Assembly (NCBI GenBank): GCA_020891255.1
Contig: BQFW01000003.1
Location: forward strand, 1,488,001 to 1,552,000
Direction of reading: 5' to 3'
DNA length: 64,000 nucleotides
Source of the DNA: Entomortierella parvispora E1425
Taxonomy: Eukaryota > Fungi > Mortierellomycota
The translations under genes were made by a program, and so were the position numbers. Shown piece by piece: positions 14,573-41,290 of the stretch (the stretch's first letter is position 1; every line of letters begins with the position of its first letter). The notes under the pieces are model-generated. The model was not told the DNA's origin and ran no database searches. It saw nothing but the letters and a program-made list of their open reading frames with translations.

Positions 14573-14899
14573 TTCCCCATTATCCTTGTTTCCCAGAATC
14601 AAACTATCAAAAAAACAAAACAAAAAGCCATAAAATAACTCGGGATTCTATCCATTTACCTGTCAGTGGGAGGGATAACGATTCAGCAAGCCCAGAGAAT
14701 TGGAAAGATCTGACCACCAGGGACAATACTCCATGATATCCTCCAAAAGTATCAATTCTTCCTCATTCTCAACACTTTTATTTTGTCGGCAATGCACCCA
14801 AATCATCCCCATCCTCCTCCCGCCAGCCAATAGCATAGAAATTAAAAAATCATATAACCAGTATGCCAACTCAACGACAGACAGCTAAATGAATGATAT

Positions 14900-17386: not shown

Positions 17387-17414
17387 AGTGACCGTCTCTC
17401 GACAGGTATAAAAG
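17387..17414 (+). promoter_or_regulatory. AGTGACC-N11-GGTATAAAAG bipartite promoter-like motif
   Basis: The same motif occurs at 33814-33787 (-, N11) and 41175-41200 (+, N9). Confidence 0.55.
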
Positions 17415-17439
17415 GTGGCCCTGGGACCACGTTTTCTTT

Positions 17440-17575
17440 TTTCTTCTTCATTGCAATCTTAGTTGACCTGCTCACACGGGTCGTAAAAAAGCGCGCTCTA
17501 AGGGAGAAACCCACTCCCAGTACAGGACGGGCAGACAACTAAACCCATTATTTTTGACCTCGGTATACCGCGGGT
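17440..17575 (+). ncRNA. Candidate Sm-site structured small RNA, locus 1
   Basis: Stem TTAGTTG(17459-65)/CAACTAA(17536-42) plus CTGCTC/GGGCAG; ATTTTTGA at 17550-57; hairpin CCTCGG-tata-CCGCGG at 17558-73. Confidence 0.35.
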
Positions 17576-18174
17576 GTTTTCACACTCGTCGCCGATGGGA
17601 ATATCTTTATTTTACAAACAAACAAAACGAAAAACGGAAGGGAGAGAGAGAGAGGGAGAGGCAGCTGCAGGGGAAATGGGGGGCAAGAACAATGCGAGAT
17701 GCATTGCTGGCACATGGGGCTTGCCGAGGCAGGCGTTCCATGCTTGTCGCATGGAGTGCACCTCGCCAGACTTGCATTGGGAGGAATGGACAACGGAGGT
17801 TCTGGTCCATTCCATGTGGGGCTGAAGACATTCCTCCATTCGCACTTTCGCTTACATGCGAAACAGAACACAGAAACGTTTGAGCCCTGATTTTTGGCGC
17901 ACTGACTTACGCCCAAATCCCCCACAACTGCCTGGCTTGCTGGCGGGCTCACAGACCAGCACTCCATCCCATAGCTCATGGTCGTGGTAATGGAGTTCGA
18001 GATTGTTGGCTTGGCGCACTCTTTTCCATGGCTCCATGACACGCGTTGCATGAAGTCGACTCATTCTCACAAAGCAGACACTGATTAGCGCGACAAGACA
18101 ATGGACCATATGCCCGTCGTGCCAGATGGAGTCTGCTTCTTTCATTTCACAATAATTTTTGATGTTTTGTATGA

Positions 18175-20337
18175 TCACTCTTCTATGAGCGTAACTTTTG
18201 TGTTCATCAAGAGGGCAGCTTGGAGTTGCGTCTTTTGAGGATGCAGTGCACACAGCCACTTGTTGATCGAGAGTCTTTCCAGCCGAGCACATCCCAGGAT
18301 CAAGGACTGGACACCGCGAACCGTGTATTCCAGACAGCGGACAATGTAGAGTCGTGTCAGTCGGCGCATGGTCCGCACCATCAAACCGATCAGCTGGTCA
18401 GAGACGGGCCATTTCTCGTATAATTCCAGGTCCAAGAGGTTTCGAGCGTGGCGACATATCAGTGGCATCCGAGCTGTCATCTCTTTCAAAACGCGATCGT
18501 CTTCACTGGTCGAGAACAGATAAGGCGGTAGTGAGAGCCGCAGAGTGAGAAGGTTGGGGCAAAATTCAAGAGATTCAAAATTAAAAGCGATTGCAACCTC
18601 TCCTTCCAGATCCAAGGTGGTTAATCGGGTCAGAGGCCAAGACCACGTCAAAGAGCCGCTCAGGGACAATGGGGTCGACGTGACAGCGGCCATGGAGTTG
18701 GTGGAGTGAAGAAACATGTCCGACAGTTTTTCGAATGTATCAGGAAGGACCATGCTCGTGCCCATAAGCGACAGATTTGTGGCGAGGGAAACCCCTTTAA
18801 GAGTTTCAAGCGTGTCTCGAAAGGCATCCATGGCGTTGATGAAGGCCGGGATCAAAAAAGAGTTTTCTCCACAGAGGTCGATAGAGCGGAGTGGGGGTAG
18901 AGACCCCTGCCGACGGGATTCATTATGGTGTGCTTCCCCCCCGCTAGCACTGTTGCCCCGTTGACGAAACGAGATCTTCGACAAAGGTTGGTTCTGGGTG
19001 GCACGATTGTGGCTGTGGCCCCCCAAGCCGCGACCTTTCCCTGTCATTGCGGCCGCCATTTTGCGCCTTTCCACAACGGCCCATTGGAACATTTCTTCAT
19101 CATGAACAGCCATCCTCAAATCTTCTAGGACCCGACATCGGGCTAGGTACTCATTCACAAAGCTGGTCCTGGACATGTATGCGGCAGGGAACGCCCTCGT
19201 ATCCGAGCCATTGGACCATCCTAGGAGCAAAGACTTCAGTGATTCGACTGGGATCTGCTCCAGCACCAAAATTGCCTCTCTCCAATGCCTCGCATCCACC
19301 ACTTCAGGCGTCCGCATTGCTTGAACCAACCGCACCAGGCCCTTATGAGCTTCATTGATGGTCTTATTGGACTGGTCATCCTTCCCCTTGATCTTGATTT
19401 CCCGCAACGTACGATGAACCGCATCGTGGACCCTAATGAATTCCAGTAATGGCTCGATCTTTGGCGCCAGATCCACCATCCGAGTACCACAGGCAGGTAT
19501 CCCCGAAATCTCAATTCGGACTAAATTCCGTAGCCGTTCCAGACTAGGTAAAAGTAGCGGAATGTGCTCTAAAGGTTGACCGATAATGCGAATATCCTCG
19601 GGCCAGTACTGAAGTAGAGACATGGCAAGATCCTTTACGAGGGACTTGGTGGGTTTTTGATCATCGATAATCCAGGGACCAGTACCCTCTGCTGTGGTGC
19701 GCCCTCGAAGATCCGCTGTAGATCGCCAGAGATCAATCTCGTATTGGTGGGTGAAGAAACGAAGATAATCGACAGTAGTTGCTGAGATCGGGGAAGCAGG
19801 ATCATCAGGTACAACAAACGCAGCAGACGCAGCAGGCACAGCAGAAGCGGCAGGGATGGCAATTGATGGCACTGCCACAGCTGCAGGTGCAGCTGACGAG
19901 GTAGATATTGTCGCATCTGAACAATTCTGTGTCTTGTCGTTGAGGCCATCCTCGTTAAGGTTGTTGCGGTTCCCCGTCCGAGCGTCAATGGTCACCTGGG
20001 CACGTGCCATCATCCCTCCAGATACCGAGATGTCACCACCACCGTTGTCTGACAAAGGGATGCCAATGATAAACGCAGAGCCGCGGATGATTTCTGTGGA
20101 TCTCGAACTCAAAAGTAAAGCGACCAAGGATGATATCCTGGCCTCTCTCTCAGCGATACTCAATGGCGATTCATGAAGAAGCTGGAATGGGGATCGATAG
20201 AGGACAGGGACAGCTCGTTGGAAGAGCTTTTGACTGGATAAAATAAGGGCATGGAGAGTGATTCGGTCGTGGACTAGGTAGGCCAATATGAGATCAATGC
20301 ATTCGTCGGGAAGTGGAAGTTTGGATGCCAACAGCAT
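18175..20337 (-). CDS. F-box/RNI-like leucine-rich protein, 720 aa, intronless
   Basis: F-box-like LPLPDECIDLILAYL...LHALILSSQKLFQRAVPVLYRSPF; LRR-like C-terminus (LTTLDLEG, CPNLLTLRL, LTRLYIVRC). Confidence 0.85.
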   Translation of the reverse strand: MLLASKLPLPDECIDLILAYLVHDRITLHALILSSQKLFQRAVPVLYRSPFQLLHESPLSIAEREARISSLVALLLSSRSTEIIRGSAFIIGIPLSDNGGGDISVSGGMMARAQVTIDARTGNRNNLNEDGLNDKTQNCSDATISTSSAAPAAVAVPSIAIPAASAVPAASAAFVVPDDPASPISATTVDYLRFFTHQYEIDLWRSTADLRGRTTAEGTGPWIIDDQKPTKSLVKDLAMSLLQYWPEDIRIIGQPLEHIPLLLPSLERLRNLVRIEISGIPACGTRMVDLAPKIEPLLEFIRVHDAVHRTLREIKIKGKDDQSNKTINEAHKGLVRLVQAMRTPEVVDARHWREAILVLEQIPVESLKSLLLGWSNGSDTRAFPAAYMSRTSFVNEYLARCRVLEDLRMAVHDEEMFQWAVVERRKMAAAMTGKGRGLGGHSHNRATQNQPLSKISFRQRGNSASGGEAHHNESRRQGSLPPLRSIDLCGENSFLIPAFINAMDAFRDTLETLKGVSLATNLSLMGTSMVLPDTFEKLSDMFLHSTNSMAAVTSTPLSLSGSLTWSWPLTRLTTLDLEGEVAIAFNFESLEFCPNLLTLRLSLPPYLFSTSEDDRVLKEMTARMPLICRHARNLLDLELYEKWPVSDQLIGLMVRTMRRLTRLYIVRCLEYTVRGVQSLILGCARLERLSINKWLCALHPQKTQLQAALLMNTKVTLIEE

Positions 20338-21194
20338 TGGTTCTCAGTGTCTTTTGGGGCCTTTCAAGGAGGGTGAATGGGTGGGAATGGATGATGACAA
20401 AAGGGGATGGGCTAGGAAAAAAAGGGAGAGATGATGAGAAGGGCCTACCGATGCAGAGTGGGAAAGGACCGGGCAAAAAAGTTAGCGCGTGTGTTGGTTG
20501 CCGTGTGTGTATATCGAGTGTGGACAAAAGAGAGTGGTCCATAGACCCATTAGGTCTCCTGCCAAGGAGAAAAAGGAAACAGAAGGGGATCAAAGAAGGG
20601 AAGGAAAGCGGAAGTTGTGCCCTCGGTGGCACAAGGACCAGAAGGACAAAACCAAACGAAGGTCCTTGGTTGGTGCAGCGGTCCCACCTGCAAGGAAAGC
20701 ACGGAAAGGGAGGAAAGAGCGCAGACCAAGAAAGAAAGGATAAGGGAAAAAAAAGGAAGAGCAGGAACATCTGGGAGAAGGCATTGCCGCGCCACTGCCA
20801 CGCGACAGCGCGCTGTGGGAGGAAAGCAGTGGCAAGTCGCGTCATGATGCGATGACCGCAAGCAATTGGCGGCAAAGCGACAGGTCAGGCCAATCCAAAA
20901 GCCTGTCCAATCTTGTTAAATGCCAGGGTCGTCGCTGTCGTTATCGTCGTCGCTCTTGAGCGGAGGGTATTCTCCTATTCTTTCCACTGGGACAGCCGCG
21001 TTTGAATTTTGTTTTGCCAAGACTTTTTTGTTGTCGAATTAAGGCTGTGGTGGGCAGCACCTACACAGCCAAACTGAAGGCCAAGGGTCAACCTCTTTGC
21101 GTTCCTTCGCCATTCATTCATTCATTCCTTCCTTCCTTCCTTTTCCCTTTGCATCTTCATACTCACTTCCACCTTCCCCTTCTCTTCACCCACA

Positions 21195-22439
21195 ATGGCC
21201 AACCCCTGGCAGAATGACGAACACACCAGTCCCGAGGGAGCAGACTCAGACACGTCTCCCCTTCTCTACCCAGACCTAGAGTCCCAAGAACACCAGACCT
21301 CTGTTTCCACCTCTGCACCACAACCGCCTCCAACACAGACTGCCGCCCCATCATCGCACTCCACAAAACCTCAAAAGACCCCTCCAACCTCATATGAAGA
21401 TGCGCCTCCCTCATACGAGGCCATCATCTCCAAAGATATTCCCCAGCTTCACGACAACTACGATCATCTGAGAGGTCCACCCGGTCAACGCGGCCGGGAC
21501 GACAAGATTCGTATTCCTTTTGATACTTACGGCGGAGCAGGTGGTAGCAGCAGCAATGGCGCCGGATCCTCCTCTGGCAATTACGGTGCCACAGGGATCG
21601 AGCACTCCCCCACATCCACACAGGCTCCAGAGCTGGGTCTGACCGGTCAGATTGCGCTCCATTCCGATGAAGAGGACGAGTCCTTTACTCAAGACATCGA
21701 TAGACTGCTCGGAGCAGACACAGATGCAGATAATGCGGAAGCCGATGGCTGTGACCATGGCGAAGATGACTCTCGTTCCTGTTGGACCGTAGTTGGTGAT
21801 GGCCAAGCCTGGGTTGCTACAGCCTACATGATCATTGTGCTGTTGCCTTGGTCTTTGTTCTGTTTTATTTGGACGCTGGGATTCATGGTTGCAGCTGGTG
21901 TGACCATGATGTTCCCTCCACTGGGCTATTTCTTCACCATTTTCGCCATCACCTCCTGGCGTGCTCTGGCACGCGTGGACCTGGTCATGTCTGCTGCCTT
22001 GGTATCAGATGAGGTCCGTCAACGGTCTCCCTTCTTTACTTCCTCGGTATATATCCCATGCGAGCCAGGTCCAGCCTGGACTCCTCCCAGGCTCTTTGGC
22101 CGTGAAATGCCCCTGCCTGAATTTATCCGCACTCGACTGCAACGTCGCCATGCTGCGCGGGGTCGCCGTCCCAGAAACCTGGTTCATCGGGCAGTGCGTC
22201 ATTTGAAGGCCAACATCAGCAACCGACACTCGGTGCGGTCCATGTTCTACTTCTTGTTCTGGAAGTTGCTCTTGGCCATCCCGGTGTTTATAGTAGTAGT
22301 CCTGTTCTTCTCGTTGTCATTGCCGTTCATGTTCTGCTTCCTGGCCTCCCTCTTGGCCGTATCGAGAGGCTTTGCAGTATGGCAGTACAAATGGGCCGTG
22401 ACCTGGCTAAGTGAAAAGCCAGCGCCCATCGTAGTTTAG
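21195..22439 (+). CDS. Membrane protein with disordered N-terminus, PPSYE (PY-like) motifs and a 'putative sensor'-like TM domain, 414 aa
   Basis: Long ATG ORF; PPTSYE/PPSYE; two hydrophobic hairpin regions (YMIIVLLPWSLFCFIWTL...; YFLFWKLLLAIPVF...). Confidence 0.75.
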   Translation: MANPWQNDEHTSPEGADSDTSPLLYPDLESQEHQTSVSTSAPQPPPTQTAAPSSHSTKPQKTPPTSYEDAPPSYEAIISKDIPQLHDNYDHLRGPPGQRGRDDKIRIPFDTYGGAGGSSSNGAGSSSGNYGATGIEHSPTSTQAPELGLTGQIALHSDEEDESFTQDIDRLLGADTDADNAEADGCDHGEDDSRSCWTVVGDGQAWVATAYMIIVLLPWSLFCFIWTLGFMVAAGVTMMFPPLGYFFTIFAITSWRALARVDLVMSAALVSDEVRQRSPFFTSSVYIPCEPGPAWTPPRLFGREMPLPEFIRTRLQRRHAARGRRPRNLVHRAVRHLKANISNRHSVRSMFYFLFWKLLLAIPVFIVVVLFFSLSLPFMFCFLASLLAVSRGFAVWQYKWAVTWLSEKPAPIVV

Positions 22440-22694
22440 GACATATCTTTGCGTACGACCCTCACATATCATACCCCCCTTCCCACTCCCACAGTGAAAT
22501 AAATGCATGAACCATCAAACAAAAAAAAAAAAAAAAAAAAAGGGTCTGAGGGGTGGCTTAGTATCATCGCCTTGGAGCGGCATTCCTTTCACACGCGCCA
22601 CTCATTCATGTCCCATCACATTGGCTCTCACCCTTTTTTCAATCTTCACTCCTTCTCTCTCACAACCAGACCACCGTCCCAGACTCATCCGACA

Positions 22695-24065: not shown

Positions 24066-24352
24066 TTAAACCACAGAAAGAAAATCATGCGCTACCCGGG
24101 GTATTTCCGTTCACCCAAATCTTTCGCGCTCTCGCTCTTTTTTCTTCATTCTAGAACAATCACGGAGAAAAGCATGGAAGCAAAGTGATAGGGGTCGCTT
24201 TCGCAAAAGCTTTATTTGTTTGATATAGATTATGACCCCCTCCTTGGACAAAGTCTACCAGCAGACGATGTGAAAGCTTGGATAGGTAATCGGAGATGTA
24301 AGTAAGAGTTTCTTTAGATGGTAAGCGAGTTGACTGTTGACAATTAGGTGCT

Positions 24353-24646
24353 TTAGAAGGAGTTCAACAAGACAGCGGGGAGGACCACGAGGACCAAGCC
24401 GAGGGCGGACAACTTCTTGTGGAGGTTGGAGTTGGCAGCGCTGGTCTGAGTGGGGGCAGCGGGGGCAGTGGAGACGGTGGTCACTACGGGAACAGTGCCG
24501 GAGGCGGTGGTGGGCACAGCGGGGGCGGTGGTGGGGACGACGGAGCCAGGGCTGCCGGAGGCAGCAACGCTAGAGGGCGAGACAACGGGGGAGGCCGAGG
24601 GGAGGCCGAGGGACATGGAAGCGGCGGCGGAGACGGAGACGGACAT
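24353..24646 (-). CDS. Small Ser/Thr/Pro/Ala-rich protein with hydrophobic C-terminus (GPI-signal-like)
   Basis: Low-complexity STPAV body ending in SALGLVLVVLPAVLLNSF; start position uncertain. Confidence 0.55.
   Translation of the reverse strand: MSVSVSAAASMSLGLPSASPVVSPSSVAASGSPGSVVPTTAPAVPTTASGTVPVVTTVSTAPAAPTQTSAANSNLHKKLSALGLVLVVLPAVLLNSF

Positions 24647-25409: not shown

Positions 25410-25412
<3 letters not shown>

Positions 25413-25457
<45 letters not shown>
25413..25457. repeat. (GA)n microsatellite, ~22 units
   Basis: Direct read. Confidence 0.95.
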
Positions 25458-25460
<3 letters not shown>

Positions 25461-29100: not shown

Positions 29101-31493
29101 AACATATGCCTCAACAGACGAGCTATTTGGTAGATATTTGAATGAAATAGCTTAGCAATCAGCACTGTACATATAAATTTATATGAAGCGAAATAAACCA
29201 TTATCGAATTGTAGGTATAGACTTACCTGATGACGCTTGGGAACATGGCGAGCGGGAACTGGAGCAAATTGAAAAGAGCGATAGAGGGGAAAACGATGTC
29301 CGTGGTCATGGGTCGTTTCATCACCAAAGCGTACACCGAGAATGTGGTCAGTGAGACCAAGAACGGAGTGCAGGCCCAAGTGAAACTTTGAACGGCCGAG
29401 AGATATCCAATCTTTTTCATCGTCGCCAATTCGTGGTCATTTCTGACGGTCAAGACTTTCTGCAAGAAGGTGCCTTCCCAAGCGTACAGCTTGATGACTC
29501 GGATGCCATTCAAGATTTCGTTCATGAGCTTGATTCTGGTGTCCTTGTTCTTCATTTGCTGTTGTTGGAAGGTCTTCATATAGATCGACAGGCGGGCATT
29601 GAGTGGGATAGTGAGGATCATGACGGTGACTCCGGCGAAAATCGCGAACGACATGGTGTCAAACAACAGATACAAGGCAATGCTGATCTGGAACAGGCCG
29701 CTCCAGACGACATGCAGATAACTGACAAGGTCCTGGACACGCTGAGCGTCAATCGACATATGGTTCACAATCTCGCCAACCTAAAGAGCAACAATCGAGA
29801 AATGTCAGTAATCAAAGGGAGTTCTATAGGACAGAGTACTTCTAACAAGTTTCTCACTTACCGTAAACTCTTGACGGGCAGAGTTGGAAAGTCGGAGCGA
29901 CTTCTGATAGATAGCGGTGACGAGTCCAGCACGAATGTGCATGCCTGTGCGGAAGCAGAGGTGAAAGTACTGGTGCAGCACCGTGGTCTGGGACAAACTG
30001 CAGGCAAACATCAAGCACGCGATCGTGTATCCTCGGTACAAAGGCTGTGGGTTATCAGTCTTGTAACTCATAACAAATCGGAGCATCTCGCCCAAAAGAA
30101 CTGGTTGAAGGAACCCCAAAATATCATTCGCCGCTTTCCAGATTCCTGCAATATAAAACGGTTTTCCGAACGCACTGGCAAGAGCCTTCAGCAGACTCGG
30201 ACTTTTTGCCAAAAAAAAAAAAGAGAAAAAAAGGGGGGGATGTCAATCATTGCACTTTTGTGCACCTTCCATTATGCAAGGGGTAGGATCTTACTGCTCT
30301 TTGGCCAGTTCTTTTTCCCAGGCAGCAGCGAAGGTGTTTGACACGTTCTTGGATTGGTCTTCTGATCTCAATGACCAAAGATCGTCCATTGTCAATGGTT
30401 TGGCGTATCCTTTGCGCATCAGTCCTGTAACCCAGTTGAATGATGCAATTGAAAAGATGTTGGCGTCGTCTTCTGGGCATTTTTCCTATTTCCAAGTAGA
30501 GCAACAAGTGTTGATAAGTCTTTCTGTCCTCTCGGAAGAGAATTTACGCGGAAGAACCTCATGCATTTGCAGCGAGCTATCTCCGCGATTTCCTTTGATT
30601 TCAGGGAGAAGCAAGGGGATCCTTTCAAGCTGCGCATCAAACAAAAAGACAGGGTTGGAGTGTCATACGTAAGTCTCGTCGCCAAGTTGAATCCCGGCAT
30701 CTCTGTGGACGCATTCCAGAGCAAACACCAAAATAGTTCCGACCATTTTGGTAAGCAAGAGACACGCGGCAGTTTGGAGATGACGCCTCTTCTCGTCTCC
30801 AATGGCATCAGCGCTGGAAGGACATCCCATGGTAAGAGTTCGAAGCTTGATTCCGGAAGCAATAATCGAAAAAAGCCAAAAGACCAGGAGCACATTCGAA
30901 GACAAAAAGGTCTTTTTGCTTTCGATCACTGTCAATGCAAACGCGAAGATCAAGGCGATGATCTCCAAGACGGACGACAAAAGCTCAAGTCCAAAGGGGT
31001 GAAAGAGCCCGTGCTTGTTTCCGAGACGATCAAAAACAACGGATGCAGTCGTGATGACGATGACAAAGACAATGAGTATCTATGCACGTCAAGTAAGAAA
31101 GGACCGAGCCACTGTCAACACGAATGAGCAATTGAGCACAGTTGCCACCAAACAAATAAAAAAAAAAAATTGAAGGAAGCAAATACTTGCCAGCTTCAGA
31201 GACTGACGCCAGCCACAGTTTGGATAGCTGAGGTTCTCTTTCTTGGACAGGATAAACAGACGGTGCAGGCCTGCGACGAACAGGAACAGCACGGGAATCA
31301 GCTTGATGAAGGTATCCTCAAAACAGGGCGTGAAGTCAGCGGGGCAGTCTGCGTCGAATGGTCCCTACAGTTGAAATGTAATCATTGTGAATTACAGTCA
31401 GAGGCATGTGAAGAGACGCGAGCTTCATTCAATTCAAACATAAAATGCGGTTGTTACCCATGATCCCCCGGACTGACATTGCCAGATGGACAT
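26173..31493 (-). CDS. YCF1: ABCC/MRP-family ABC transporter, Ycf1-like (TMD0-TMD1-NBD1-TMD2-NBD2), multi-exon
   Basis: N-terminal W|GPF..DFTPCFED; NBD1 GRVGSGKSS and LSGGQKARISLARAVY; NBD2 GRTGAGKSS and FSVGQRQLICLARALL; LDEATAAID. The orthology call is approximate. Confidence 0.9.
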
Positions 31494-33556
31494 TGGAGGA
31501 GTGAATGGGATGGGATCGATTGAAGATGGCAAATGGATTGGTTTTCCGACTGTGTCTGTGGGCGCCGTTTAAACTATTCTGCTGTGTTGTTTGTTGCTTG
31601 ACTCGACGACAATGAATTAGGGCAAGCGCGGACAGACAGAAGGACGGGAAGAAGAGAAGGGGAGAAGCAGCGAAAGGAGAGTGGGGAGTGGAGGTGAGGG
31701 CAAGGTCAAAGACGAAGGCAAGGTAAAGAGGAAAAAGGGAAAGATCAAGAAGCTATGTGGATCAACTGCAGAAAAAAAGAAAATTTCGAACTCCTCAAAC
31801 TGCCCGTCGCTGCTGCTGACAAAACCAATTCTCCTCTCTCGTCGGGCCTCCTGTCACGTCTATCTCTAGCGACGACAATATCTTTGCAGATGAACTCTAG
31901 TCGTCGAATCTCACCATCGGCAGATGCTTCCCCAGGCTCTCTTGATCCTTTCGACCCTTTGTCAGGCCGTGACCCTCCCTCTTCAGATCACACTCCTCGA
32001 AGCGGAGAACTTCCAGATCCAACTGGCAAAATCCCGATCCACCAACCGACTGTCCGACACGACGTTTCAATTACCTGGCCATATATGAGAAGAATGGAGG
32101 ATCGATTAAGCAGAGACCTGAGCCGCGTGTTCGGCAATGGTTAAGATACTTGAAAACAATTGTTGTGGTTGTTGTTCTTGCTGTTCTTGCTGTTCTTGTT
32201 GTTCCTCTTGTTCATCGAAGGTGTGTCCTGGCGCTAAAAAAAAGTCCATGTGGTCACGTGGTCGTGGCAAAATCGACGCCTGCAACATGCGTCCGTGTCC
32301 GCCTCTTCTCCAGACAACCTGGACGGACAAGCATTGTTGAACTGGCGTCAGAAGTTGACCAACAGGCGAAAGTTTAGAAAGAACTCGAGGAGTGCAAAGC
32401 CTTATTCCTGAAGGATTCCAGACGAAATGGCCCTTGAATTCTTTGAGATGAGAACGGAAAATCTCGAAAACAGGAGCTTGGCTGCATATCCCCTCAAGAA
32501 AGATTGACATCGAGATGAACACTGCGATCTGACATGCCCGAGTTTTGGCCAGTTAGTAGGTTTTGAGTGAATCACATTATGATGCTTGTGAACGACTTGC
32601 TTTTATTGACGAAAGTCGCCAATAAAGATGCAGGACCTCAGAGTCGGAGGCAATTCGTATAAATGGCAAGGATTGTTGCGGCCATGTCTTGGGACCAGTT
32701 GAATGGAAGTTGTGGCACATGGTGAATCGAATGAAGCACCTTTAATGGCACAGGTTTCTTTCCTATATGGATGGAGTAGAATGACGGCTACCCGCCCATG
32801 CTCCATCTCGTGAACCTACAGGGACGCGAGTGTTACATGCAGGGTACTGACAACCATCGTTCACCGAGCTACCTAATCTTTATTCATGGCAGGGCAGGGC
32901 AGGCGTGCACCATCCCCATGTATGTCTAAACGAAGTTGCTCGCGTGTGAAAGACAGGCGTGGGTATATGGAAAGTGGGAATTGAAGGATCAGATATGAAG
33001 GGGCAGGGTGTTCTCCCTCCTTCCAGGAACAGCAGCATCGTCCACAGAGGCACGACTTCGCCGGGGCACACTTCCTGCTCACCAGAGCAGACATGTTAAA
33101 AGGCGGTCATTCGAAGAATGGTCGAATTCTCATTGCAGCGCGTGTCATGGAGCCAAGGGGCAGGCAGCCGCAAGAGGAAAGGGTCAACTTCATTGCCTCC
33201 ACCCCAACTGGGATTGATTTGGTGGTCTGTGTGCTCACGGAAAGGCAACGGCGCCACAGCCGTGGAGGACTGATTTTCTCCGCACAAAGTCAGTGCGCCA
33301 AAACAAAGGAGGGCTCACGATTCAGCGTCCTGTTTCGCATGGCAATGAACACGCGAACGGAACATGGAATGAAACCGGGCCTCGACTGTCCATCCTTCTC
33401 TCCTTCTCGATGCACTTCTTGAACGAGCCCCATCAGGTGAAATGCATCTCACATTGCCACCTCCACTGCCCCTGCCTCTTCTCCCTTTCCTTTTGTGTTT
33501 GTTTGTTTGATAAAATAAAGATAGTACCGTCGGTGCGCGAGTGTATTCAGTGAATT

Positions 33557-33760
33557 CACTCACGGTGATACCGAGGTCAAAAATATGGGAAATAGAGGAC
33601 CTTCGTCCAAGAGCATACTTGGACAACAGAGGGGAGTTAGGAGATATGTAGACTTCGGCCCTTGGGCATCGGGCGGTAGTCATCCTCCATACCTCAACTA
33701 ACTTCTCTGATGCCGTCGCAGCATCGAGTCGATGATCAACTAAACAGATCTGTGAAGAAG
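33557..33760 (-). ncRNA. Candidate Sm-site structured small RNA, locus 2
   Basis: TATA at 33796-33787; stem 33705-33688 paired with 33648-33633; 7-bp hairpin GTCCAAG/CTTGGAC at 33605-24; ATTTTTGA at 33584-77; hairpin CCTCGGT-atc-ACCGTGAG. Confidence 0.35.
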
Positions 33761-33786
33761 AAAGAAAGAACTGGTCCCGAGGGCAG

Positions 33787-33814
33787 CTTTTATACCCGTT
33801 GAGGGGCGGTCACT
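33787..33814 (-). promoter_or_regulatory. AGTGACC-N11-GGTATAAAAG bipartite promoter-like motif
   Basis: Plus strand reads cttttatacc(33787-96)...ggtcact(33808-14). Confidence 0.55.
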
Positions 33815-34965
33815 TTGACCGAGGGGGGGCAAGTTAGCAATGGTGGGCATGGTTGTGTAACGCAAAAAGCTCGACCATTCTGTCAAGAAGAAAGCCGTCG
33901 ATTTCATTCCAGGATTTTTTGATTTTATGATTTTCACGCGTGTAAACTTCATGCGGGCACCGTCCGTGCATTCGTTCCATCTCATTCACAACATGCATGC
34001 ATTCAGCCATTCATCTCTTCTTCCGTCCCTTCACTGCTAGCTGTCGCTTGCTGCCAGAAATATCGCAGTCCTTGACTTCCTTCTGTGGCTGTCTGACTGA
34101 ATATCTACGATACACCCGAAAGATAACTTATTTTATTTTAATAAGTCGCGTTTGTGGGCAGGTGGGCCATTTGTGCCCAGTGGTGAAACCAACGTGCGTA
34201 TAAGGGCCGTGGTTCCGTTTGAGAAGAACCCTGAGAGAAGGGCTTGATACTTCTCACAAATAAGGAAGAAAGGCCACGTTGGTCAACATGGACGATCAGG
34301 AGCACGGAGCGGAAGGGGATTGGGGTTGAACTATCGTCACTCCTTATGACACTCAAGCAGTTGGTGCTCTTTTGACACTTCGCATGAGTTCCAGACCGCA
34401 GCCATCGAACACTAATAATGTTGGATCGAGAGTCAAAGTCGATCCAAGCAGAAATGCGCTCTAGCCAATGCTTAAGTAAAGAAAATTCCCACATGTTGCA
34501 GAGGAAGCAGGGAATCGCCTGCTAGGAGGTAAATAAACAAGGCGCCGATAAATAATACATTGTCAACAAGTGGCATCACTTTGGGTCTATGCCCCACCCG
34601 AGGTACTCCAAGTGGTGGAGTGGACTCAATTACGTTCGAGCAAAGTCAGTATCAGGGGACCCAAAGAGTTGTTAATACACGACAAAGTGCTTGCTTGTAG
34701 TTTTTTTACACAGGTTTTTTTAAATAGTATTTCAACGAATCTTGAGCAAGGAATGGTTCGTTCGTTCTGGGATGAAGATCATCGATTCTGAAAAAGAAAA
34801 GGAAAAAAAAATAAAAGCCAAGAGAAAAAAAAAGTACAAGTCCTTTTTGGGCTCGTCAAAGTTGATAATGACCGCGACGTTAACATTGTTGCGGCGGCTA
34901 ACTGTTTGGTAGGAACCATGTCTTGGTTCGACAAAATGGATGGCTGCAGGTGAACTCGAGCCCTT

Positions 34966-36647
34966 CTATTGCACCTCCACATCCACAAAAGTGACAGGTA
35001 ACTTGAACAACTTTTGTAACTTGTCACATTGGACGGGGTCGGGATGGAGATCCGCAGTGATCTTCCTCAGGTGTGTCCAGTTGGTGCACATCCACCTAAT
35101 GTCTTCCTCGTGCAGGATTTGATCTGTTCCATGAAACAAGAAAGTGCCCAACTGTACCAGCGGTGCAAGTTCTTGGAGACCGCGAGAAGCCAAAATGAGA
35201 TGAGGGGCCCTAGAGTCTTCTCGCCTATTGTCCGGCATCCAGAATTCCAGGTACCTTAGATTGACCAACTCTCCTACCCGCCTGAGGGCGGGTTTATCCC
35301 AGCCAATCGAATCGTCTTTGGGGAATAATAAGGCGAAGGACAGATGTTGGAGGTCTTTGCACATCCACTTCCCGCGGTTGTGAAGACCTCTCGCTTCGTA
35401 AAGGTGCCTGATTGCTTTGGCCTGAGCGATCTCTCCTTGGGCTTCCTCAGCCATTATGAGAGCATCATCAGCCTTTGTGTCGGCTGCTTCTTGTTCGTCG
35501 CGCTTGAGATTGGACCACCGATAGTCAATAAGATCATGGGCGTCAATAATGGCCCCCCGGAAAGAAACCAGGCATGGACAGTTCTCCATTATGTACTGAC
35601 CCATCCAGCCCCGCAGGTTCTCGCACTTGTACAAATTTAGCTCTGCCAAAGTACTAAAGTGCAACTCCAGACCTGCAAGAGAGCGGAACCAAAAGCTGGT
35701 GCCATAGACGGTGACGTTTTCGAGTTGAGCTCCTGGCGTGCCTAGACGAGATCCCGAGGCCTTCAGCATGAGAGCGACGATTAAGTCGTGGAGCGACGTG
35801 GTGCTGTTATGCAAACTGATGCTGTTGAGACCTGGCCAGTCTTGGTTCAAAAGATCTTCGCGACAGATGTCCATCTCCGTGTCGCTGGTACCAGTACTGT
35901 CCCAGTACAGTGACCTCAAGTTTGGGCAGCTCGTAGCCCACTCCAGCTGTTGACTGAAGGGAAGACTTGACCGGTGGAGGGTGAGGTTCAACATTCTGGA
36001 TTTGATGTTGCCACTTCGCCCGATTTGGGACTCGTAGACCTTGAATGTAACGAGCGACTGCAAGTGCGGCAGTATTGCTGCGACAGGTTCTCTGAGAAGA
36101 ATCATATTCAAGGTCAGCGAGTCCAAAGGGGGGCATGCCAGCAGAATATCGTTCCACAGGAGCCCCCTAATCACGAGCGGAAGGGTATCCTCAAGGTGGA
36201 GATTTTTTAATCCCGGGAGCTTCCTGACAAGTTCGGTGGCGTTCACGAGGCTGTTATCAGGGGCTCCAATGAATTGCAGTTTCAATTCGGAAACATTGGG
36301 GTAAGGATTGGGCTGGAGGCTGTACAGGGTCATGATATCCATGTTGTTCTTGGTTCCTGTGCCTTCTTTGAAAGAGAGGTCTCGAATTCGAAAGGCATTT
36401 GCCTGCAGCGAGGCGACCGGAAGTTGGATGCCCCTCTTCGGAAGAGAGCCGAGTTCATAATATGGCACCACAACTTGTTCACCCTTGCTGTCCGCGCAAT
36501 AGTTCGAAGATCGCCCATGTGACTCAGCTTCCAGCTGACAAGTAGCACTATGTTTGGGTCATTTAGAGCAACCTTGAAAACAGGATAGGCAATAGTGTTA
36601 GAACATGGAATGAGAGTGCCATCTGCAGCCACGTTTTTTCTCATCAT
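34966..36647 (-). pseudogene. F-box/RNI-like LRR gene with one frameshift near 36440 (pseudogene or sequencing error)
   Basis: The F-box-like DPNIVLLVSWKLSHMGDLRTIARTARVNKLWCHIM is in one frame. The 501-aa LRR body (LKNLHLED, CPNLRSLYW, WMCKDLQHL, WMCTNWTHLRKI) is in the next frame. Confidence 0.7.
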
Positions 36648-37351
36648 GCGCCATACGTGGGCTGGATTAACCATTTATGTGTTTGATCGTGGGTTGGAGA
36701 GACAAAAACGGTCGAGATGGTTTCTGAGGCTGCTGGCGATGATTACAAGGGTGATAGTGAGGGTGGAACTTGGGATAGTGGATGGGATGGTGGGATAAGA
36801 AGGGGGAAGCCAAAGGGGAGAGTAAGAGTGGTGGAGTAAAGGTAGGGAACAACAGGGGATGTTCAGCGTGGTTTATATGAGGTCCAGCCGATCAGTGGTC
36901 GCAATCAGTGATTGACTCGTTTCCAAACACATATCCACACAATCGGACCTTCCCGTTTTGCCCCTCTGATCTGCTGCAGGACAATATTGTCGCTTGGCCA
37001 GACAACAATAGAATAAAGACACATAGCCTTGTTATTTAATTCTTCTCTTTTGTTCTTTGCACTGGCTGCTTGAAAGGTGTCTGGTGTGGTTTTGATTCGA
37101 TCAAAGATACCCTCGGCGCTTAATTGGGAAAAGCGCTCATCTAACAGTTCTTGACGGCATGGGTGGTGTATAGGAGAGGACGACATGTTACCAACAATTT
37201 CGCATACCAAAAATACAAGAGCCTCCATTTAACGCATACGACCTTTTATAGCCATTGTGGACAAAGAAGGCCCAAGAACGGATGAAAGGGTAACTCCAGA
37301 CCCTTCCCCAGAATACTTAAAAAGGATATGAATACATTTGAAGACAAGGTT

Positions 37352-39875
37352 CTAGTGATGGAGGCCCAAAAAGCCATAGGTTCGGTACATGCGTTTGGTA
37401 GTGCGTAGTCTCTGATGGACTGTAAGAGAGCTTTCCTCAATTTCACGCAGATCTTCCAACACCTTGTCCCTCAGACCCTCGGTTCGTGTGAGGCGAGAGG
37501 CAAACGTTCTCAGCAAATGAACCTCGCACAAAATGAGGCCCTGAGTCCTGTAGGGAACCTTGCCCTTCTTAGCCCTGATCCTGGACAGCCTATCAGAGGA
37601 CAAGTTGATTTGTTGAAGAGTGTTGAACAGGGGTTCCACAGATGAGGAGCGCGATGAATCGACGGATCCTTCAATTGGTCGACCATGTCGTTCTTCGTCT
37701 GCGATGTTCTCGTAATCATCAGAGAACTGCCCATTGCTGGCCTGTCCGTGTTCCGTGGACCGATGCGATTCCGAGTCCATATTCTTTGCTCGGGATGAGG
37801 TACGCGCCACATCATCACCATCGGTTGAGGCCAGGTTCAACAGCCTCTCAACCTGTCTTAACGAGTTTTTCATCTGTAATGATACCACGCCAAGATTCCT
37901 TCCAGCTATGCGCTGCCATGTGCTCTTTGCCTGTGAAGAAACTGCCCAGAGTAGCAGCAAACTGGGTCCAACAGCCAAGAATGCAAAGTTGAGCTCATTG
38001 GCCTTCAACAGCTTATCCAGAGCCGCCATGGCCACCTCAACATCAACTTTGGTCTTCTGAACTTGAATCAGTAATGTTTGGAGAAGGTTGCCAGTTACCG
38101 CTCCTTTGAGGGGTGCCTATGAATAACAAGAGCACAGTTGAGGACAAACCAAAGTTCCTTCTTGGGGCGCCACCAGCAATAGATAATCCAGCGGTCTCAT
38201 ACCTTCAAGTCCTGCTCATAGGCTCGCATCACAGCCGAAATATCGCCGTTATGAACGGCATGCGAGAGTCGTTCAAGATCTTCAGGTCCCATGTGTAAAT
38301 GTTCCTTTCCGAAATCCAATACCATGCGTTCTAGGCTCTATCAAGTTATGACAATGGCTGGTTACTATACTAGCCTTGTACGACAATATGTGAGAAATAC
38401 AAGGTATTAGCGTGAAAACGACGTGTTCCTTACTGCAATATCAGACTTTAGGCTTTCATTTCCAAGCATTTGCAATGAGCCCTGGTCATCGCTGTGTCGG
38501 ATGATGGTCATAATTCTCCTGGACGGTTCCCAGACCCAATCCGCTACAAAGCGCCTTACAGTCTCCCAAGCCTCATCGATAAGTTCATCCAAATCCGCGC
38601 GGTGCTCGCTCACATATTGGAGTCCATATTTCAATCCGAAATATCCAATCAAAGTGGGAATCCAGATTCTGGTAATCCAGGAGGGTCGATAAAACTGCTG
38701 GGCTCGAGTCTCCGTCTCATCCGTGTACCGAGGTATTTGGATCTGGATCAGGTCCTTTAAATGAGAAAGTGTCTCATTACTACTAAGACTGGCGACCCCA
38801 CGTAAATCTCCAATGATGGTCAATGAGCGCGAAGCAGCTCTGAATGATGAGCTGAACTTTCTTTGCTGAGTGGTGTCGGTGAGCTTGTGGGTGTCCTTGG
38901 AAGCTTTGTCGAGCACTCGTTCCATGAGACAAATTGTTTTGGAGACCTGTTCTTGGACAAACTCCTCTGTCTGTCCAGTTGCGAATCCCTCCTGCTCCAA
39001 GCACTCGGGAGCCAAATGGAGTCCTTGTTCAGCCAAGAGACCGAGGCATTCAGCCTGATATTCCCGAAGCTGTTGCAAGTGTCGACGGTGGTGTGAAATC
39101 TCGTAATGGATCGCCTCTGGGAAAGAGACGGGCTGGGAGATCAAATGTCTACTCAGGAATGTGGGAAAGTACTGCAGAAGTTGAAGAATGTGCGTCGCTT
39201 TATCTTCAACCTGACTAGTTCCGATTAACGAGTCGATGTGTTCGCGAGTTGACTCAATCACGCTCTTCGTGAGCAAGAAAAATCGGTGTGGAGATGCTAT
39301 TATAGCAAGGGACAACACGAGTTAGCATGAGTTTGTGTCGTTTCCATACTGTAATCGGGTGGCGCGTTATTTATCTTACTCTGGAGAATATAGAGGAGTT
39401 TCCACGAACGGTTGTCCAGAAGTGATTGCCAGTACTCTATCTCGGCCGCCAAGGGTAGGGTCGCATTAAGGATGTTGTCCAGTAAGTTGAGGTATACCGA
39501 GATAGTACACTTTGCGATGAATAGGTGCTGTAAGCGAGCAAGTTCGTTTCCATCTTGGGATTCAGACACGGTAGTAGAAATCGACTTGTCTGAAAGAGCT
39601 TCAACCTTTTCAATCTCTAGAAGAACGCGCTCCATGGAAGGGACAACCCCAGAACGCAGATCCAAGATATCGATCGAAGACCGGAGTCCGTTTCTGAGGG
39701 CGATTTCAGCTTGACCAGAGACTGCACGCTGGTGTCTCTGTTTTTTGTGGCTGGGTGGCGAGGACACGGCAGCATCTTGCATGCCACCTTCCAAAGGCGC
39801 TTGGGCATCGAGGTGAAACAGCTGCACCAAATCGGTGTTAAGATGCTGTAGTCTGTCTGTAATGAATGTTCCCAT
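37352..39875 (-). CDS. NCA2: Nuclear control of ATPase protein 2 (NCA2), multi-exon
   Basis: WIPTL...FVADWVWEP..IMTIIRH; SLERMVLDF...MRAYEQDLK; AMAALDKLLKANELNFAFLAVGP; GLILCEVHLLR. Confidence 0.88.
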
Positions 39876-40035
39876 GGTTGGCTCCTGTTCGATCTGAAGA
39901 TGTTGTGTGGGAAGGAGCATGCTCGGTCGCGCGTTTCGTCATCTTATGTATTCACGTGATACTGTTTTGTTGACTTTTGCCACCAATTTTGCTCTCTGAG
40001 CCTCTTTCGTTTCCTCCATTACACATCGCAGCACC

Positions 40036-40714
40036 ATGGTTCTCATCTCTATACCCGCTTCAGCCTCGAGAAATGCACCAGCGACTACTTTTGCGACCTG
40101 TTGTGATACTCAGTCAACTATCATGCTCGAGTTCCAGGGAATGATTGAAATGGATGGAACAACTTGGGCTGGAAACCAGCTTGGGCAACTCTCTATCCTC
40201 GACGGGGTATGCTCTTATCCAGCCCCACTTCTTCTCCTGCAGGCAAACACTATTATGACGCAATCAAATACTCATAGGATATCTTCAACGTTAGGGAGTC
40301 AAAGCACAACTTGTCATTGGAAACCATCGTCTGGACGGCAAGGTTATTAAGCTGGACAAGCCCTTGCTTTTGATACAAAAACAGCGGCCAAGCAAGGACA
40401 CTGTCGAGGACTTGAGCATTCCAAAGACTATGAACGACGAGGATTATGGAAACCGCCGATCATCTTTTGATGTAAGGTCATCATCACCACCTTGGCATGG
40501 AGACCATGATAACGATGATACAATGATGTCGACTGGCGCAGGACCAACGACGGATATAGAAGCGATGGACCCAATGGCGCCATCGAGCATCAAGGACACA
40601 GTTCAATACAACACAGTAGCAGTGATCCGTCAAAAGATTCTGTTCAACGTCATGCCAGTGCCTATCATTCACACGGAACGCAGGGGGCTGACAGTCATCA
40701 AACGTGGCGTATAG
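40036..40714 (+). CDS. CTF8: Chromosome transmission fidelity protein 8 (Ctf18-RFC subunit), 2 exons
   Basis: IMLEFQGMIE...LGQL|GVKAQLVIGNHRLDGKVIKLDKPL...YNTVAVIRQKILFNVMPVPII; intron 40207-40294. Confidence 0.85.
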
Positions 40715-41174
40715 ACAGCGCACGACATAGAAACCCTCTTCCGCCTATTGTATCATAGTAAAATCAACTGTCACCAAAGACATATGGATACTGCTTGCTC
40801 GCTTGTGTAGTAATAATTGATTCTATCTACTGGAATCGATGCTCCCCGGGATTTCTTTGATCACTTGAAAGAGGCTACAGTAGAGCTGTTTGATGGTAGC
40901 TCTTCAAGCGCTCTTTAAGGAGAGTCGCTGGGTCAAACAAACCAAACCTAACATCGTCTCCACGATCAAACCACAAGAACAGGGCCATGTCTATTATTGT
41001 CATCAGGGGATGATGTCCCATTGGGGACTAGGAAGGTCCCATTGCAGAGGTCTCTATTTAATTTAGTAACAAAAGGATAAAAATCGATATATCTGCTGCG
41101 TGGGCATCAGCGACCGATTTTTGGATGGTCCCCTTCCTCTTTTCCTGGCTCGCTCCCCTCCGTCTCCCAGCTCG

Positions 41175-41200
41175 AGTGACCCTCCCTGTCGGTATAAAAG
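41175..41200 (+). promoter_or_regulatory. AGTGACC-N9-GGTATAAAAG bipartite promoter-like motif
   Basis: Third occurrence of the motif. Confidence 0.5.
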
Positions 41201-41219
41201 TGAGGCATTATTTTTTCTG

Positions 41220-41290
41220 AAGAACCTCATAAATAGGCAAAGGACTCCTGTCCTTCGCCTGATTTGGACCTCGGTGTACTACACCGAGGT
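41220..41290 (+). ncRNA. Candidate Sm-site structured small RNA, locus 3 (stem-loop / Sm-like site / stem-loop)
   Basis: AGGC-A-AAGGAC-tcct-GTCCTT-C-GCCT at 41235-60; ATTTGG at 41262-67; inverted repeat ACCTCGGTGT-act-ACACCGAGGT at 41268-90. Confidence 0.35.

What the first reader, a model, noticed from the sequence alone, without database searches (positions are those of the whole stretch)
17387..41290. Three loci define a candidate novel Sm-class small RNA family
Seen at 17.4 kb (+), 33.7 kb (-) and 41.2 kb (+), in the same order each time: AGTGACC, 9-11 nt, GGTATAAAAG; a structured body that differs in length and sequence but always has a stem-loop closing just upstream of the next element; ATTTTTGA (loci 1 and 2) or ATTTGGA (locus 3); a hairpin starting CCTCGG(T) whose 3' arm co-varies; then TATCTTT(A)TTT and an A-rich tract. 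Established: RAU4-6GR flanked by stem-loops is the Sm-binding architecture of Pol II snRNAs and of nematode SmY/SL RNAs. The hallmark sequences of U1, U2, U4, U5, U11, U12 and U4atac are absent. Inference: an undescribed fungal Sm-RNA family with its own promoter element.
Basis: partly seen in the sequence, partly recalled or inferred. Interest (0 to 1): 0.85.

Follow-up and report, generated by a model that had tools for sequence, protein, structure and literature searches.

The report
Orphan Sm-type small RNA gene family
Three sites in this Mortierella-type soil fungus are built like snRNA genes (shared promoter, Sm-protein binding site, terminal hairpin, shared end signal) but match no known RNA family, so they are a credible but not yet expression-proven new small-RNA family.

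Summary
AGTGACC-N9-11-GGTATAAAAG occurs exactly three times in 64 kb (0 expected). The 3' module TTT(T/G)GACCTCGGT...CCGA...TATCTTT occurs at the same three loci, in the same order and strand (0 expected; only 3 chance hits in 596 Gb of prokaryotic DNA). A further shared upstream box, CCCCTCNGTC, was found.

No Rfam family matches, even at E<=10. The shared frame has no usable start codon, and the one long ORF has no protein homologue, so the loci are non-coding.

Predicted RNAs are about 150, 230 and 72 nt and are structured (z -1.8, -4.4, -6.2). The claimed "co-variation" is only four wobble-compatible one-sided changes.

New findings:
- Loci 1 and 2 are a roughly 0.85-1 kb duplication with alignable flanks but unrelated cores.
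- A decayed copy lies just upstream of locus 1.
- In a related strain the locus-2 promoter is about five-copy, and a paralogue carries a different core.

The host is a Mortierellaceae fungus. No RNA-seq run was listed, so transcription, cap and Sm binding are untested.

Best reading (about 0.5): a lineage-specific family of Pol II snRNA-type genes for orphan Sm-class RNAs.

The parts
17239..17414 (+). Locus 1 promoter. Distal block shared with locus 2 (CTGGAATGAAATCGACG, CGAGCTTTTTGCGTTACACAA), CCCCTCTGTC (17360-17369), AGTGACC (17387-17393) and GGTATAAAAG (17405-17414).
   Evidence: promoter alignment to locus 2 z=36
17450..17600 (+). Locus 1 predicted RNA, about 150 nt; the start is inferred at the CA after the pyrimidine tract 17432-17449. 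It has a constant leader with CTTAGTTGACC (17458-17468), a unique core, the Sm-type site ATTTTTGA (17550-17557) and a 3' stem-loop (17558-17598).
   Evidence: 3' hairpin -17.5 kcal/mol, z -2.3 on the sense strand against -0.9 on the antisense strand
17602..17665 (+). Locus 1 downstream signal: TATCTTTATTTTA (17602-17614), then a CAAA/A-rich tract and a GA tract. Candidate 3'-box or terminator.
33787..33950 (-). Locus 2 promoter: distal block, CCCCTCGGTC (33826-33817), AGTGACC (33814-33808) and GGTATAAAAG (33796-33787).
   Evidence: this bin has depth about 557 in strain X3 against about 110 for single-copy flanks.
33525..33753 (-). Locus 2 predicted RNA, about 229 nt: leader with TTAGTTGA (33743-33736), a multi-hairpin core, the Sm-type site ATTTTTGA (33584-33577) and a 3' stem-loop (33576-33527).
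   Evidence: -80.4 kcal/mol, z -4.4; antisense z -2.4; 3' hairpin z -4.2
33460..33523 (-). Locus 2 downstream signal: TATCTTTATTTTA (33523-33511), then a CAAA/A-rich tract and a GA-rich tract.
41155..41200 (+). Locus 3 promoter: CCCCTCCGTC (41155-41164), AGTGACC (41175-41181) and GGTATAAAAG (41191-41200). It has no other similarity to loci 1 and 2.
41220..41291 (+). Locus 3 predicted minimal RNA, about 72 nt: a 5' hairpin (41235-41260; 11 bp with one A.C mismatch), the Sm-type site ATTTGGA (41262-41268) and a perfect 3' hairpin of about 10 bp (41269-41290).
   Evidence: z -6.2; z -6.5
41295..41330 (+). Locus 3 downstream signal: TATCTTTTTTG followed by an A-rich tract.
16745..16990 (+). Decayed paralogue in tandem upstream of locus 1. 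The promoter is alignable, but AGTGACC has become GCGACC and GGTATAAAAG has become TCAATAAACG. Most of the body and the Sm site are missing, and remnants of the 3' hairpin and TATCTT remain.
   Evidence: D3; local alignment score 43 against shuffled 22.3 +/- 2.7, maximum 30
17700..18070 (+). Downstream part of the duplication unit shared with locus 2 (33440-33115, -). It consists of patchy conserved non-coding blocks such as TTTTGGCGCACTGACTT and TGGCTCCATGACACGCG.

Best explanation
The three loci, plus one decayed copy, are members of a lineage-specific family of independently transcribed snRNA-type genes in a Mortierellaceae fungus. Inferred mechanism: a compact promoter (CCCCTCNGTC, then AGTGACC, then 9-11 nt, then GGTATAAAAG) directs RNA polymerase II to start about 30-45 nt downstream. 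The transcript folds into a locus-specific structured body. It ends in a constant module: a single-stranded Sm-type site (AUUUUUGA or AUUUGGA) immediately followed by a stem-loop that begins CCUCGGU. That pairing is the signal used for Sm-ring assembly and cap hypermethylation. The shared UAUCUUU(A)UUU plus A-rich tract just beyond the hairpin serves as the 3'-end formation signal (3'-box-like or terminator-like). The bodies are interchangeable: constant flanks carry unrelated cores, so each member is probably a distinct RNP scaffold or base-pairing RNA. Shown here: motif architecture, order, strand and statistical excess; absence of coding potential; absence from Rfam; predicted structure; paralogy, core replacement and multi-copy status. 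Inferred only: transcription, the polymerase, the RNA ends, Sm binding and function.
For: Both composite motifs occur only at these three loci and essentially nowhere else in very large collections. Locus 3 shares only the short functional-looking boxes with loci 1 and 2, in the same order, with no flank similarity. That argues for constraint on those boxes rather than recent copying. The Sm-type site is unpaired or in an open loop in the MFE folds, and it is followed directly by a stable hairpin. All four substitutions in the 3' hairpin stems keep pairing through G-U, and the sense strand folds better than the antisense strand for loci 1 and 2. No Rfam family matches. The loci are not coding: there is no ATG before the shared frame in loci 1 and 3, locus 3 has only a 2-codon ORF, and the locus-2 ORF has no homologue. 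The neighbouring decayed copy has lost exactly the boxes that the three loci keep intact. In a related strain the locus-2 promoter is about five-copy, and a second locus-2-like contig carries a different core of the same length. The NCBI annotation calls no gene at locus 1. Precedent for orphan lineage-specific Sm-class snRNAs: Drosophila LU (PMC4053861). Unchecked notes from other windows report SNAPC4-like, ICE1-like and INTS7 genes in this genome.
Against: There is no expression data: no RNA run was listed. There is no two-sided compensatory change. Locus 1 folds only marginally better than shuffles (z -1.8). The locus 3 5' hairpin pairs better on the antisense strand. No counterpart lies at the syntenic site of locus 1 in three other Mortierellaceae genera, and in Gryganskiella the intergenic gap there is 213 bp against 3.6 kb here. 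The similarity of the locus 1 and 2 flanks is no higher than that of the non-coding sequence further downstream, so that pair alone does not show selection. The purine usually preceding the Sm core is a U in loci 1 and 2. TATA plus T-runs would also suit Pol III. The promoter could not be compared with the canonical snRNA genes of this genome.
Confidence: 0.5

Rival explanations
1. Pol III small RNA genes with a type-3-like external promoter (upstream element plus TATA). The T-runs are terminators and the 'Sm site' is not bound by Sm proteins.
For: The TATA box lies close to an upstream element. In locus 3 a T6 run directly follows the terminal hairpin, and in loci 1 and 2 there is T3AT4. An unchecked note reports SNAPc-like factors in this genome.
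Against: The T5 inside ATTTTTGA of loci 1 and 2 would terminate Pol III before the conserved hairpin. Yet the hairpin and TATCTTT are conserved in all three loci. The Sm-site-plus-hairpin arrangement is the Pol II Sm-class signature.
Confidence: 0.1
2. Degenerating or neutrally drifting duplicates of a canonical snRNA gene (variant or pseudo-snRNAs). They keep the promoter and 3' end only because the copies are young.
For: Loci 1 and 2 are a duplication whose flanks are no better conserved than the downstream non-coding DNA. A clearly decayed copy lies next door. Drosophila LU is thought to derive from a U5 duplicate.
Against: Locus 3 shares only the short boxes, intact, without flank similarity. 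The bodies are not degraded versions of each other or of any Rfam snRNA; they are unrelated and well folded. The decayed copy shows what loss of the boxes looks like.
Confidence: 0.12
3. Highly divergent canonical snRNAs that Rfam models miss, for example the minor-spliceosome U11 or U4atac.
For: An unchecked note reports a U6atac-like gene in this genome. From general knowledge, fungal U11 and U4atac are hard to detect by homology.
Against: No snRNA model scores even at E<=10 on 200-400 nt slices. Reading the sequences, I found no 5'-splice-site pairing box, no U12 branch-site box, no U6atac-pairing box and no U5 loop 1. Two paralogues with unrelated cores cannot both be the same snRNA.
Confidence: 0.07
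4. TATA-driven mRNA or lncRNA units, such as micro-protein genes or long structured leaders, rather than small stable RNAs.
For: Distances between shared anchors differ by multiples of 3: 37/46/19 nt, then 21 and 33 nt. Locus 2 carries a 122-aa ORF. Conserved blocks continue about 450 nt downstream in loci 1 and 2. Other notes describe many TATA-driven micro-genes in this genome.
Against: No ATG precedes the shared frame in loci 1 and 3, and in-frame stops lie just upstream. The locus-2 ORF has no homologue among 1.8e9 representatives or in the word-indexed search. The frame breaks further downstream, and the opposite-strand ORFs are unrelated. No gene is annotated there.
Confidence: 0.1
5. 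Fragments or termini of a mobile or segmentally duplicated element, with no RNA function.
For: Locus 1 sits in a 3.4 kb stretch absent from Gryganskiella. The copies are tandem and dispersed, and the distal promoter block is multi-copy in strain X3 with differing proximal sequence. The window is transposon-rich at its start (notes).
Against: No terminal inverted or long direct repeats were found, and no transposon protein domains in the flanking ORFs. Self-BLAST of the window finds no further copies. Short boxes conserved in a fixed order without contiguous similarity (locus 3) are unlike transposon ends.
Confidence: 0.08

Closest known systems
Spliceosomal Sm-class snRNA genes (U1, U2, U4, U5; U11, U12, U4atac)
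   Same: Independent small genes with a compact upstream promoter. A single-stranded AU3-5G(R) site is followed directly by a terminal stem-loop, and a conserved signal lies just downstream of the mature end. Sizes are 70-230 nt.
   Different: No match to any of their covariance models. No splice-site, branch-site or U6-pairing boxes. Paralogues carry unrelated cores.
Drosophila LU (Like-U) snRNA, an orphan Sm-class snRNA (PMC4053861)
   Same: Lineage-restricted. It has an snRNA-type promoter, 5' and 3' stem-loops flanking an Sm site, unknown function, a nearby pseudogene copy, and a proposed origin by duplication and rapid divergence of an snRNA gene.
   Different: LU is a single gene with shown TMG cap, Sm binding, nuclear localisation and covariation. 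Here there are several members with swapped cores and no experimental evidence.
Nematode SmY RNAs
   Same: Locus 3 has the same minimal plan: about 70-90 nt, one stem-loop on each side of an Sm site, and membership of a multi-copy family with a shared upstream motif (from general knowledge).
   Different: No match to the Rfam SmY model. SmY is tied to spliced-leader trans-splicing, which is not known in fungi. Loci 1 and 2 are much larger.
U7 snRNA
   Same: A short RNA with a non-canonical Sm-type site (AUUUG...) followed by a terminal hairpin. There is a pyrimidine-rich stretch near the presumed 5' end.
   Different: There is no Rfam U7 hit. Locus 3 has a stable 5' hairpin where U7 has a single-stranded guide. 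The U7-specific Sm sequence is absent. Fungi are not known to use U7/SLBP histone 3' processing (general knowledge; not tested here).
Herpesvirus saimiri HSURs
   Same: Non-spliceosomal Sm-class RNAs that reuse the host snRNA promoter, Sm site and 3' box around unrelated, base-pairing bodies (general knowledge).
   Different: HSURs are viral. Here the loci are chromosomal, in a fungus, with no sign of a viral context.

Membership tests
Sm-class snRNA (class, not a specific family) | Sm site RAU3-6GR in an unpaired stretch | tested here: met
   AUUUUUGA lies at 17550-17557 and 33584-33577, and GAUUUGGA at 41261-41268. The site is unpaired in the MFE folds of loci 2 and 3 and sits in an open loop in locus 1. 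In loci 1 and 2 the base before the A is U, not a purine.
Sm-class snRNA (class, not a specific family) | Stem-loop immediately 3' of the Sm site (the assembly signal) | tested here: met
   The hairpins start 1-2 nt after the site: -17.5, -22.5 and about -17 kcal/mol, with z -2.3, -4.2 and -6.5 (the last for both locus 3 hairpins together).
Sm-class snRNA (class, not a specific family) | Discrete Pol II transcript with a TMG cap, bound by Sm proteins | not testable with these tools
   No RNA run was listed for this organism. Only DNA contigs could be laid.
Sm-class snRNA (class, not a specific family) | Promoter and 3'-end signal shared with the genome's canonical snRNA genes (PSE/SNAPc, 3' box/Integrator) | tested here: inconclusive
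   The three loci share the upstream boxes, the TATA and TATCTTT plus an A-rich tract. No canonical snRNA gene of this genome or of relatives could be fetched for comparison.
Sm-class snRNA (class, not a specific family) | Covariation supporting the secondary structure | tested here: inconclusive
   Of 14 pairs, 0 have two-sided changes and 4 have one-sided wobble-compatible changes. Three sequences give no statistical power.
Rfam U1, U2, U4, U5, U11, U12, U4atac, U7, SmY | Match to the family covariance model | tested here: not met
   Nothing reached gathering score in the whole window. None of these families appears even at E<=10 on the three loci.
Protein-coding micro-gene | ATG-initiated ORF conserved among copies, with protein homologues | tested here: not met
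   No ATG precedes the shared frame in loci 1 and 3. There were 0 hits for the locus-2 ORF.
Transposable element or its termini | Terminal repeats, transposon-encoded protein, contiguous similarity among copies | tested here: not met
   No terminal repeats were found around locus 1 and no Pfam domains in the flanking ORFs. Locus 3 shares only short boxes. Genome-wide copy structure could not be tested.

The most novel reading that the evidence does not exclude
The family is a natural 'cassette' system. A constant snRNA-type promoter, a short leader and an Sm-site/hairpin/3'-end module carry exchangeable cores. The cores act as sequence- or structure-specific guides or decoys, in the manner of U7 or the HSURs. 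Members would be diversified by core replacement, as seen between loci 1 and 2 and between the two locus-2-like contigs of the related strain. That would amount to a programmable Sm-RNP family in an early-diverging fungus that appears to keep animal-like snRNA machinery.
Probability: 0.1. Interest if true: 0.85.

Novelty: new variant of a known kind. Interest (0 to 1): 0.58.

Why it matters
Outside the spliceosome and telomerase, fungi have no described Sm-class RNAs. Orphan Sm RNAs are known only as isolated cases: LU in flies, SmY in nematodes, U7, and the viral HSURs. A multi-member family in Mortierellaceae would be a new kind of nuclear RNP, because it combines a shared promoter and Sm/3'-end module with unrelated cores. 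It would also give a handle on how snRNA-type transcription and 3' processing work in early-diverging fungi; unchecked notes report SNAPc-, LEC- and Integrator-like genes in this genome. The shared boxes would also define a compact expression cassette for small nuclear RNAs in an oleaginous, biotechnologically used fungal group. If the loci prove untranscribed, the finding reduces to a curious local duplication.

Tried and rejected
- **Rfam.** Scanned at gathering score over the window and at E<=10 over each locus. No snRNA or any other credible family matched. Three relatives' loci were also empty.
- **RNA-seq.** None was listed. The second search returned only DNA or unknown-type runs, so expression is untested.
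- **Metagenome scans.** The extended promoter pattern gave 0 hits. The 3' module gave one hit inside what reads like an ordinary coding region of an unrelated metagenome contig, a chance match. The prokaryote and viral collections gave 3 chance hits and 0 hits.
- **Synteny.** Orthologues of the 720-aa neighbour gene were fetched from Gryganskiella, Entomortierella chlamydospora and Mortierella alpina. None carries the motifs.
- **Coding hypothesis.** Rejected.
- **Profile search.** nhmmer profiles of the promoter and the 3' module found no further significant copies in the window or in the fetched loci. Only the decayed copy emerged, by pairwise alignment.
- **Antisense targets.** Short-match BLAST of the bodies against the window and duplex predictions among the bodies gave nothing meaningful.
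- **Extending beyond the window, or reaching strain X3 contigs, through exact-protein look-ups.** This failed.
- **Manual hallmark checks.** I looked for U1, U2, U4, U5, U11, U12 and U4atac hallmarks, a telomerase template, C/D and H/ACA boxes and spliced-leader donor sites. None was convincing. UUAGUUGA in loci 1 and 2 only weakly recalls the U2 branch-site box.

Full report
**Source of the window.** A 720-aa ORF of the window is found, identical, only on contig BQFW01000003.1 of NCBI assembly GCA_020891255.1. All its homologues are Mortierellaceae proteins (Gryganskiella, Linnemannia, Mortierella, Entomortierella and others), the best at 52% identity. The host is therefore an early-diverging (Mortierellomycotina) fungus with no close sequenced relative in the protein collection.

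**The observation.**
- AGTGACC, a spacer of 11, 11 or 9 nt, then GGTATAAAAG occurs at 17387-17414 (+), 33814-33787 (-) and 41175-41200 (+), and nowhere else. No match appeared in 100 dinucleotide shuffles.
- A composite pattern for the 3' end (TTTK-GACCTCGGT, 6-36 nt, CCGA, 4-9 nt, TATCTTT) matches only these three loci, on the same strands.
- That pattern gave a single chance match in the JGI metagenome collection, inside what reads like an ordinary coding region of an unrelated contig. It gave three chance matches in 596 Gb of prokaryotic genomes and none in IMG/VR.
- I also noticed a third shared upstream box, CCCCTCNGTC, 2-17 nt before AGTGACC in all three loci.
- A structural scan for an Sm-type site followed by a stable hairpin and TCTTT found only these three places in the window. 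It found none in 46 kb from three other Mortierellaceae.

**What the loci are not.**
- *Not in Rfam.* Rfam finds nothing at gathering score in the window. Very permissive scans (E<=10) of each locus return only noise, with no snRNA, U7 or SmY model.
- *Not coding.* In the one frame open across the shared 3' module, loci 1 and 3 have an in-frame stop and no ATG upstream. Locus 3 contains only a two-codon ORF.
- *No protein homologue.* The 122-aa mechanical ORF of locus 2 has no homologue in the word-indexed search or among 1.8 billion cluster representatives. Opposite-strand ORFs of loci 1 and 2 are unrelated.
- *Unannotated, with no transposon features.* The NCBI annotation calls no gene at locus 1. 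Flanking ORFs carry no transposon domains, and there are no terminal repeats.
- *One oddity remains.* The distances between shared anchors differ by multiples of three. I treat this as coincidence (roughly 1 in 30-80, judged after the fact).

**Structure.**
- From the CA after the pyrimidine tract to the end of the hairpin, locus 2 (230 nt) folds at -80.4 kcal/mol, z -4.4. The antisense strand gives z -2.4.
- Locus 3 folds as hairpin, AUUUGGA, hairpin, with z -6.2 to -6.5.
- Locus 1 is only marginal (z -1.8). Its 3' hairpin is better on the sense strand than on the antisense strand (z -2.3 against -0.9).
- The Sm-type site is unpaired and is followed within 1-2 nt by the hairpin. This is the arrangement recognised during Sm-core assembly (established knowledge).
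Among 14 pairs in the 3' hairpin, none changes on both sides. Four change on one side and remain paired through G-U. This is compatible with an RNA-level constraint but proves nothing with three sequences.
- The 5' hairpin of locus 3 has an A.C mismatch that would be a G.U pair on the other strand.

**Relationships among the copies.**
- Loci 1 and 2 are a duplication of about 0.85-1 kb (17239-18070 against 33950-33115).
- Segment by segment:

| Segment | z against shuffles |
|---|---|
| Promoter | 36 |
| TATA-to-CA tract | 8.9 |
| 3' module | 19 |
| Next 100 nt | 11 |
| Core between the short leader (TTAGTTGAYC) and ~15 nt before the Sm site | -1.2 |

  The cores are therefore unrelated, with sharp borders.
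- The flanks are about as similar as the non-coding DNA further downstream. The locus 1/2 pair alone therefore shows recent copying plus core replacement, not selection on the flanks.
- The argument for function rests on locus 3. It shares no flank similarity but keeps every short box intact and in order.
- It also rests on a decayed tandem copy at 16745-16990. Its promoter still aligns (score 43 against shuffled 22 +/- 2.7), but its AGTGACC, TATA, body and Sm site are degraded.

**Evidence from other strains.**
- No RNA run could be listed.
- I laid DNA contigs of four runs on 31000-36900. Run X3 carries the same species label and differs at about 6-15% of the laid letters here. In X3 the promoter bin 33758-33954 has summed depth about 557, against about 110 for single-copy flanks, which implies roughly five copies.
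- Two ~1 kb X3 contigs share both ends (32875 and 33873), each at full depth. One runs through the locus-2 body. The other replaces 33607-33764 (156 nt) with 155 unalignable letters.
- A loose end reads as the X3 counterpart of locus 1's proximal promoter (TCTGTCCTTGG...CAAGTGACC).
- The family therefore exists in a second isolate, is multi-copy, and again shows constant flanks with a swapped core.
- At the syntenic site of locus 1, Gryganskiella has only 213 bp between the two neighbouring genes. E. chlamydospora and M. alpina lack the motifs as well. The family may thus be young or mobile within the genome.

**Interpretation.**
- The best-supported reading (about 0.5) is a lineage-specific family of Pol II snRNA-type genes producing orphan Sm-class RNAs. 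The promoter boxes, the Sm site plus hairpin and the UAUCUUU/A-rich 3' signal would be the constant expression and assembly module. The cores would be the functional, member-specific part.
- Unchecked notes from other windows report SNAPC4-like, ICE1-like and INTS7 genes and a U6atac-like RNA in this genome. If true, animal-type snRNA transcription and 3'-box processing are plausible here.
- The nearest documented analogue is Drosophila LU. It is an orphan Sm-class snRNA with snRNA-type promoter elements and stem-loops flanking an Sm site. It has a nearby truncated pseudogene and a suspected origin from a diverged snRNA duplicate (PMC4053861).
- Locus 3 has the minimal plan of nematode SmY RNAs but does not match their model.
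- Rival readings and my weights:

| Rival reading | Weight |
|---|---|
| Pol III genes (argued against by the internal T5 upstream of the conserved hairpin) | 0.1 |
| Drifting pseudo-snRNAs | 0.12 |
| Very divergent minor-spliceosome snRNAs | 0.07 |
| mRNA or lncRNA units | 0.1 |
| Mobile or duplicated DNA without RNA function | 0.08 |

**Limits.** Transcription, polymerase, RNA ends, cap, Sm binding and function are all inferred. I could not scan the rest of the genome, could not retrieve the canonical snRNA genes to compare promoters, and could not obtain the strain X3 sequences for a covariation test.

Noticed in passing
window 16745-16990 (+): A decayed tandem paralogue lies just upstream of locus 1. 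Its promoter is alignable, but AGTGACC, the TATA, most of the body and the Sm site are lost. It is evidence of birth-and-death turnover in the family.
   Followed up: partly
window 17700-18070 (+) and 33440-33115 (-): Patchy conserved non-coding blocks lie downstream of loci 1 and 2: TTTTGGCGCACTGACTT at 17892/33303 and TGGCTCCATGACACGCG at 18029/33155. In locus 1 the first reads GAUUUUUGG plus a short hairpin, a second Sm-like site. Their purpose is unknown.
   Followed up: partly
window 14572-18175: A 3.6 kb intergenic stretch between the WD40 gene and the 720-aa gene holds locus 1 and the decayed copy. The same two genes are 213 bp apart in Gryganskiella cystojenkinii (L002), so the stretch looks like a lineage-specific insertion or expansion.
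   Followed up: partly
window 17450-17457, 33753-33744, 41213-41222: The sequence at each presumed start is a palindrome or near-palindrome: ATTGCAAT, ACAGATCTGT and TTCTGAAGAA. This could be a factor-binding site or a 5' mini-hairpin, and it may be coincidence.
   Followed up: no
window 17565-17601, 33569-33524, 41276-41294 and further downstream: Lengths between shared anchors differ by multiples of three (37/46/19 nt, then 21 and 33 nt between loci 1 and 2), although the frame lacks a start codon and has no protein homologues.
   Followed up: yes
window 33837-33950 (-), in strain X3 contigs: In X3 the distal promoter block (CTGGAATGAAATCGACG...CGAGCTTTTTGCGTTACACAA) is also joined to at least two other proximal sequences lacking the AGTGACC context, seen as loose ends at 33837. 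The distal block may be an independently repeated enhancer-like or mobile piece.
   Followed up: no
window 37352-39920 (-): ORF pieces with NCA2 (ATP synthase regulation) domains form a multi-exon gene. Its start lies about 1.25 kb from locus 3, in divergent orientation.
   Followed up: no
window 34966-36471 (-) and 18175-20337 (-): These are large ORFs (501 and 720 aa) with no Pfam domain. The 501-aa ORF region differs at about 15% of positions from strain X3 and is partly missing there, so it appears to evolve fast.
   Followed up: no
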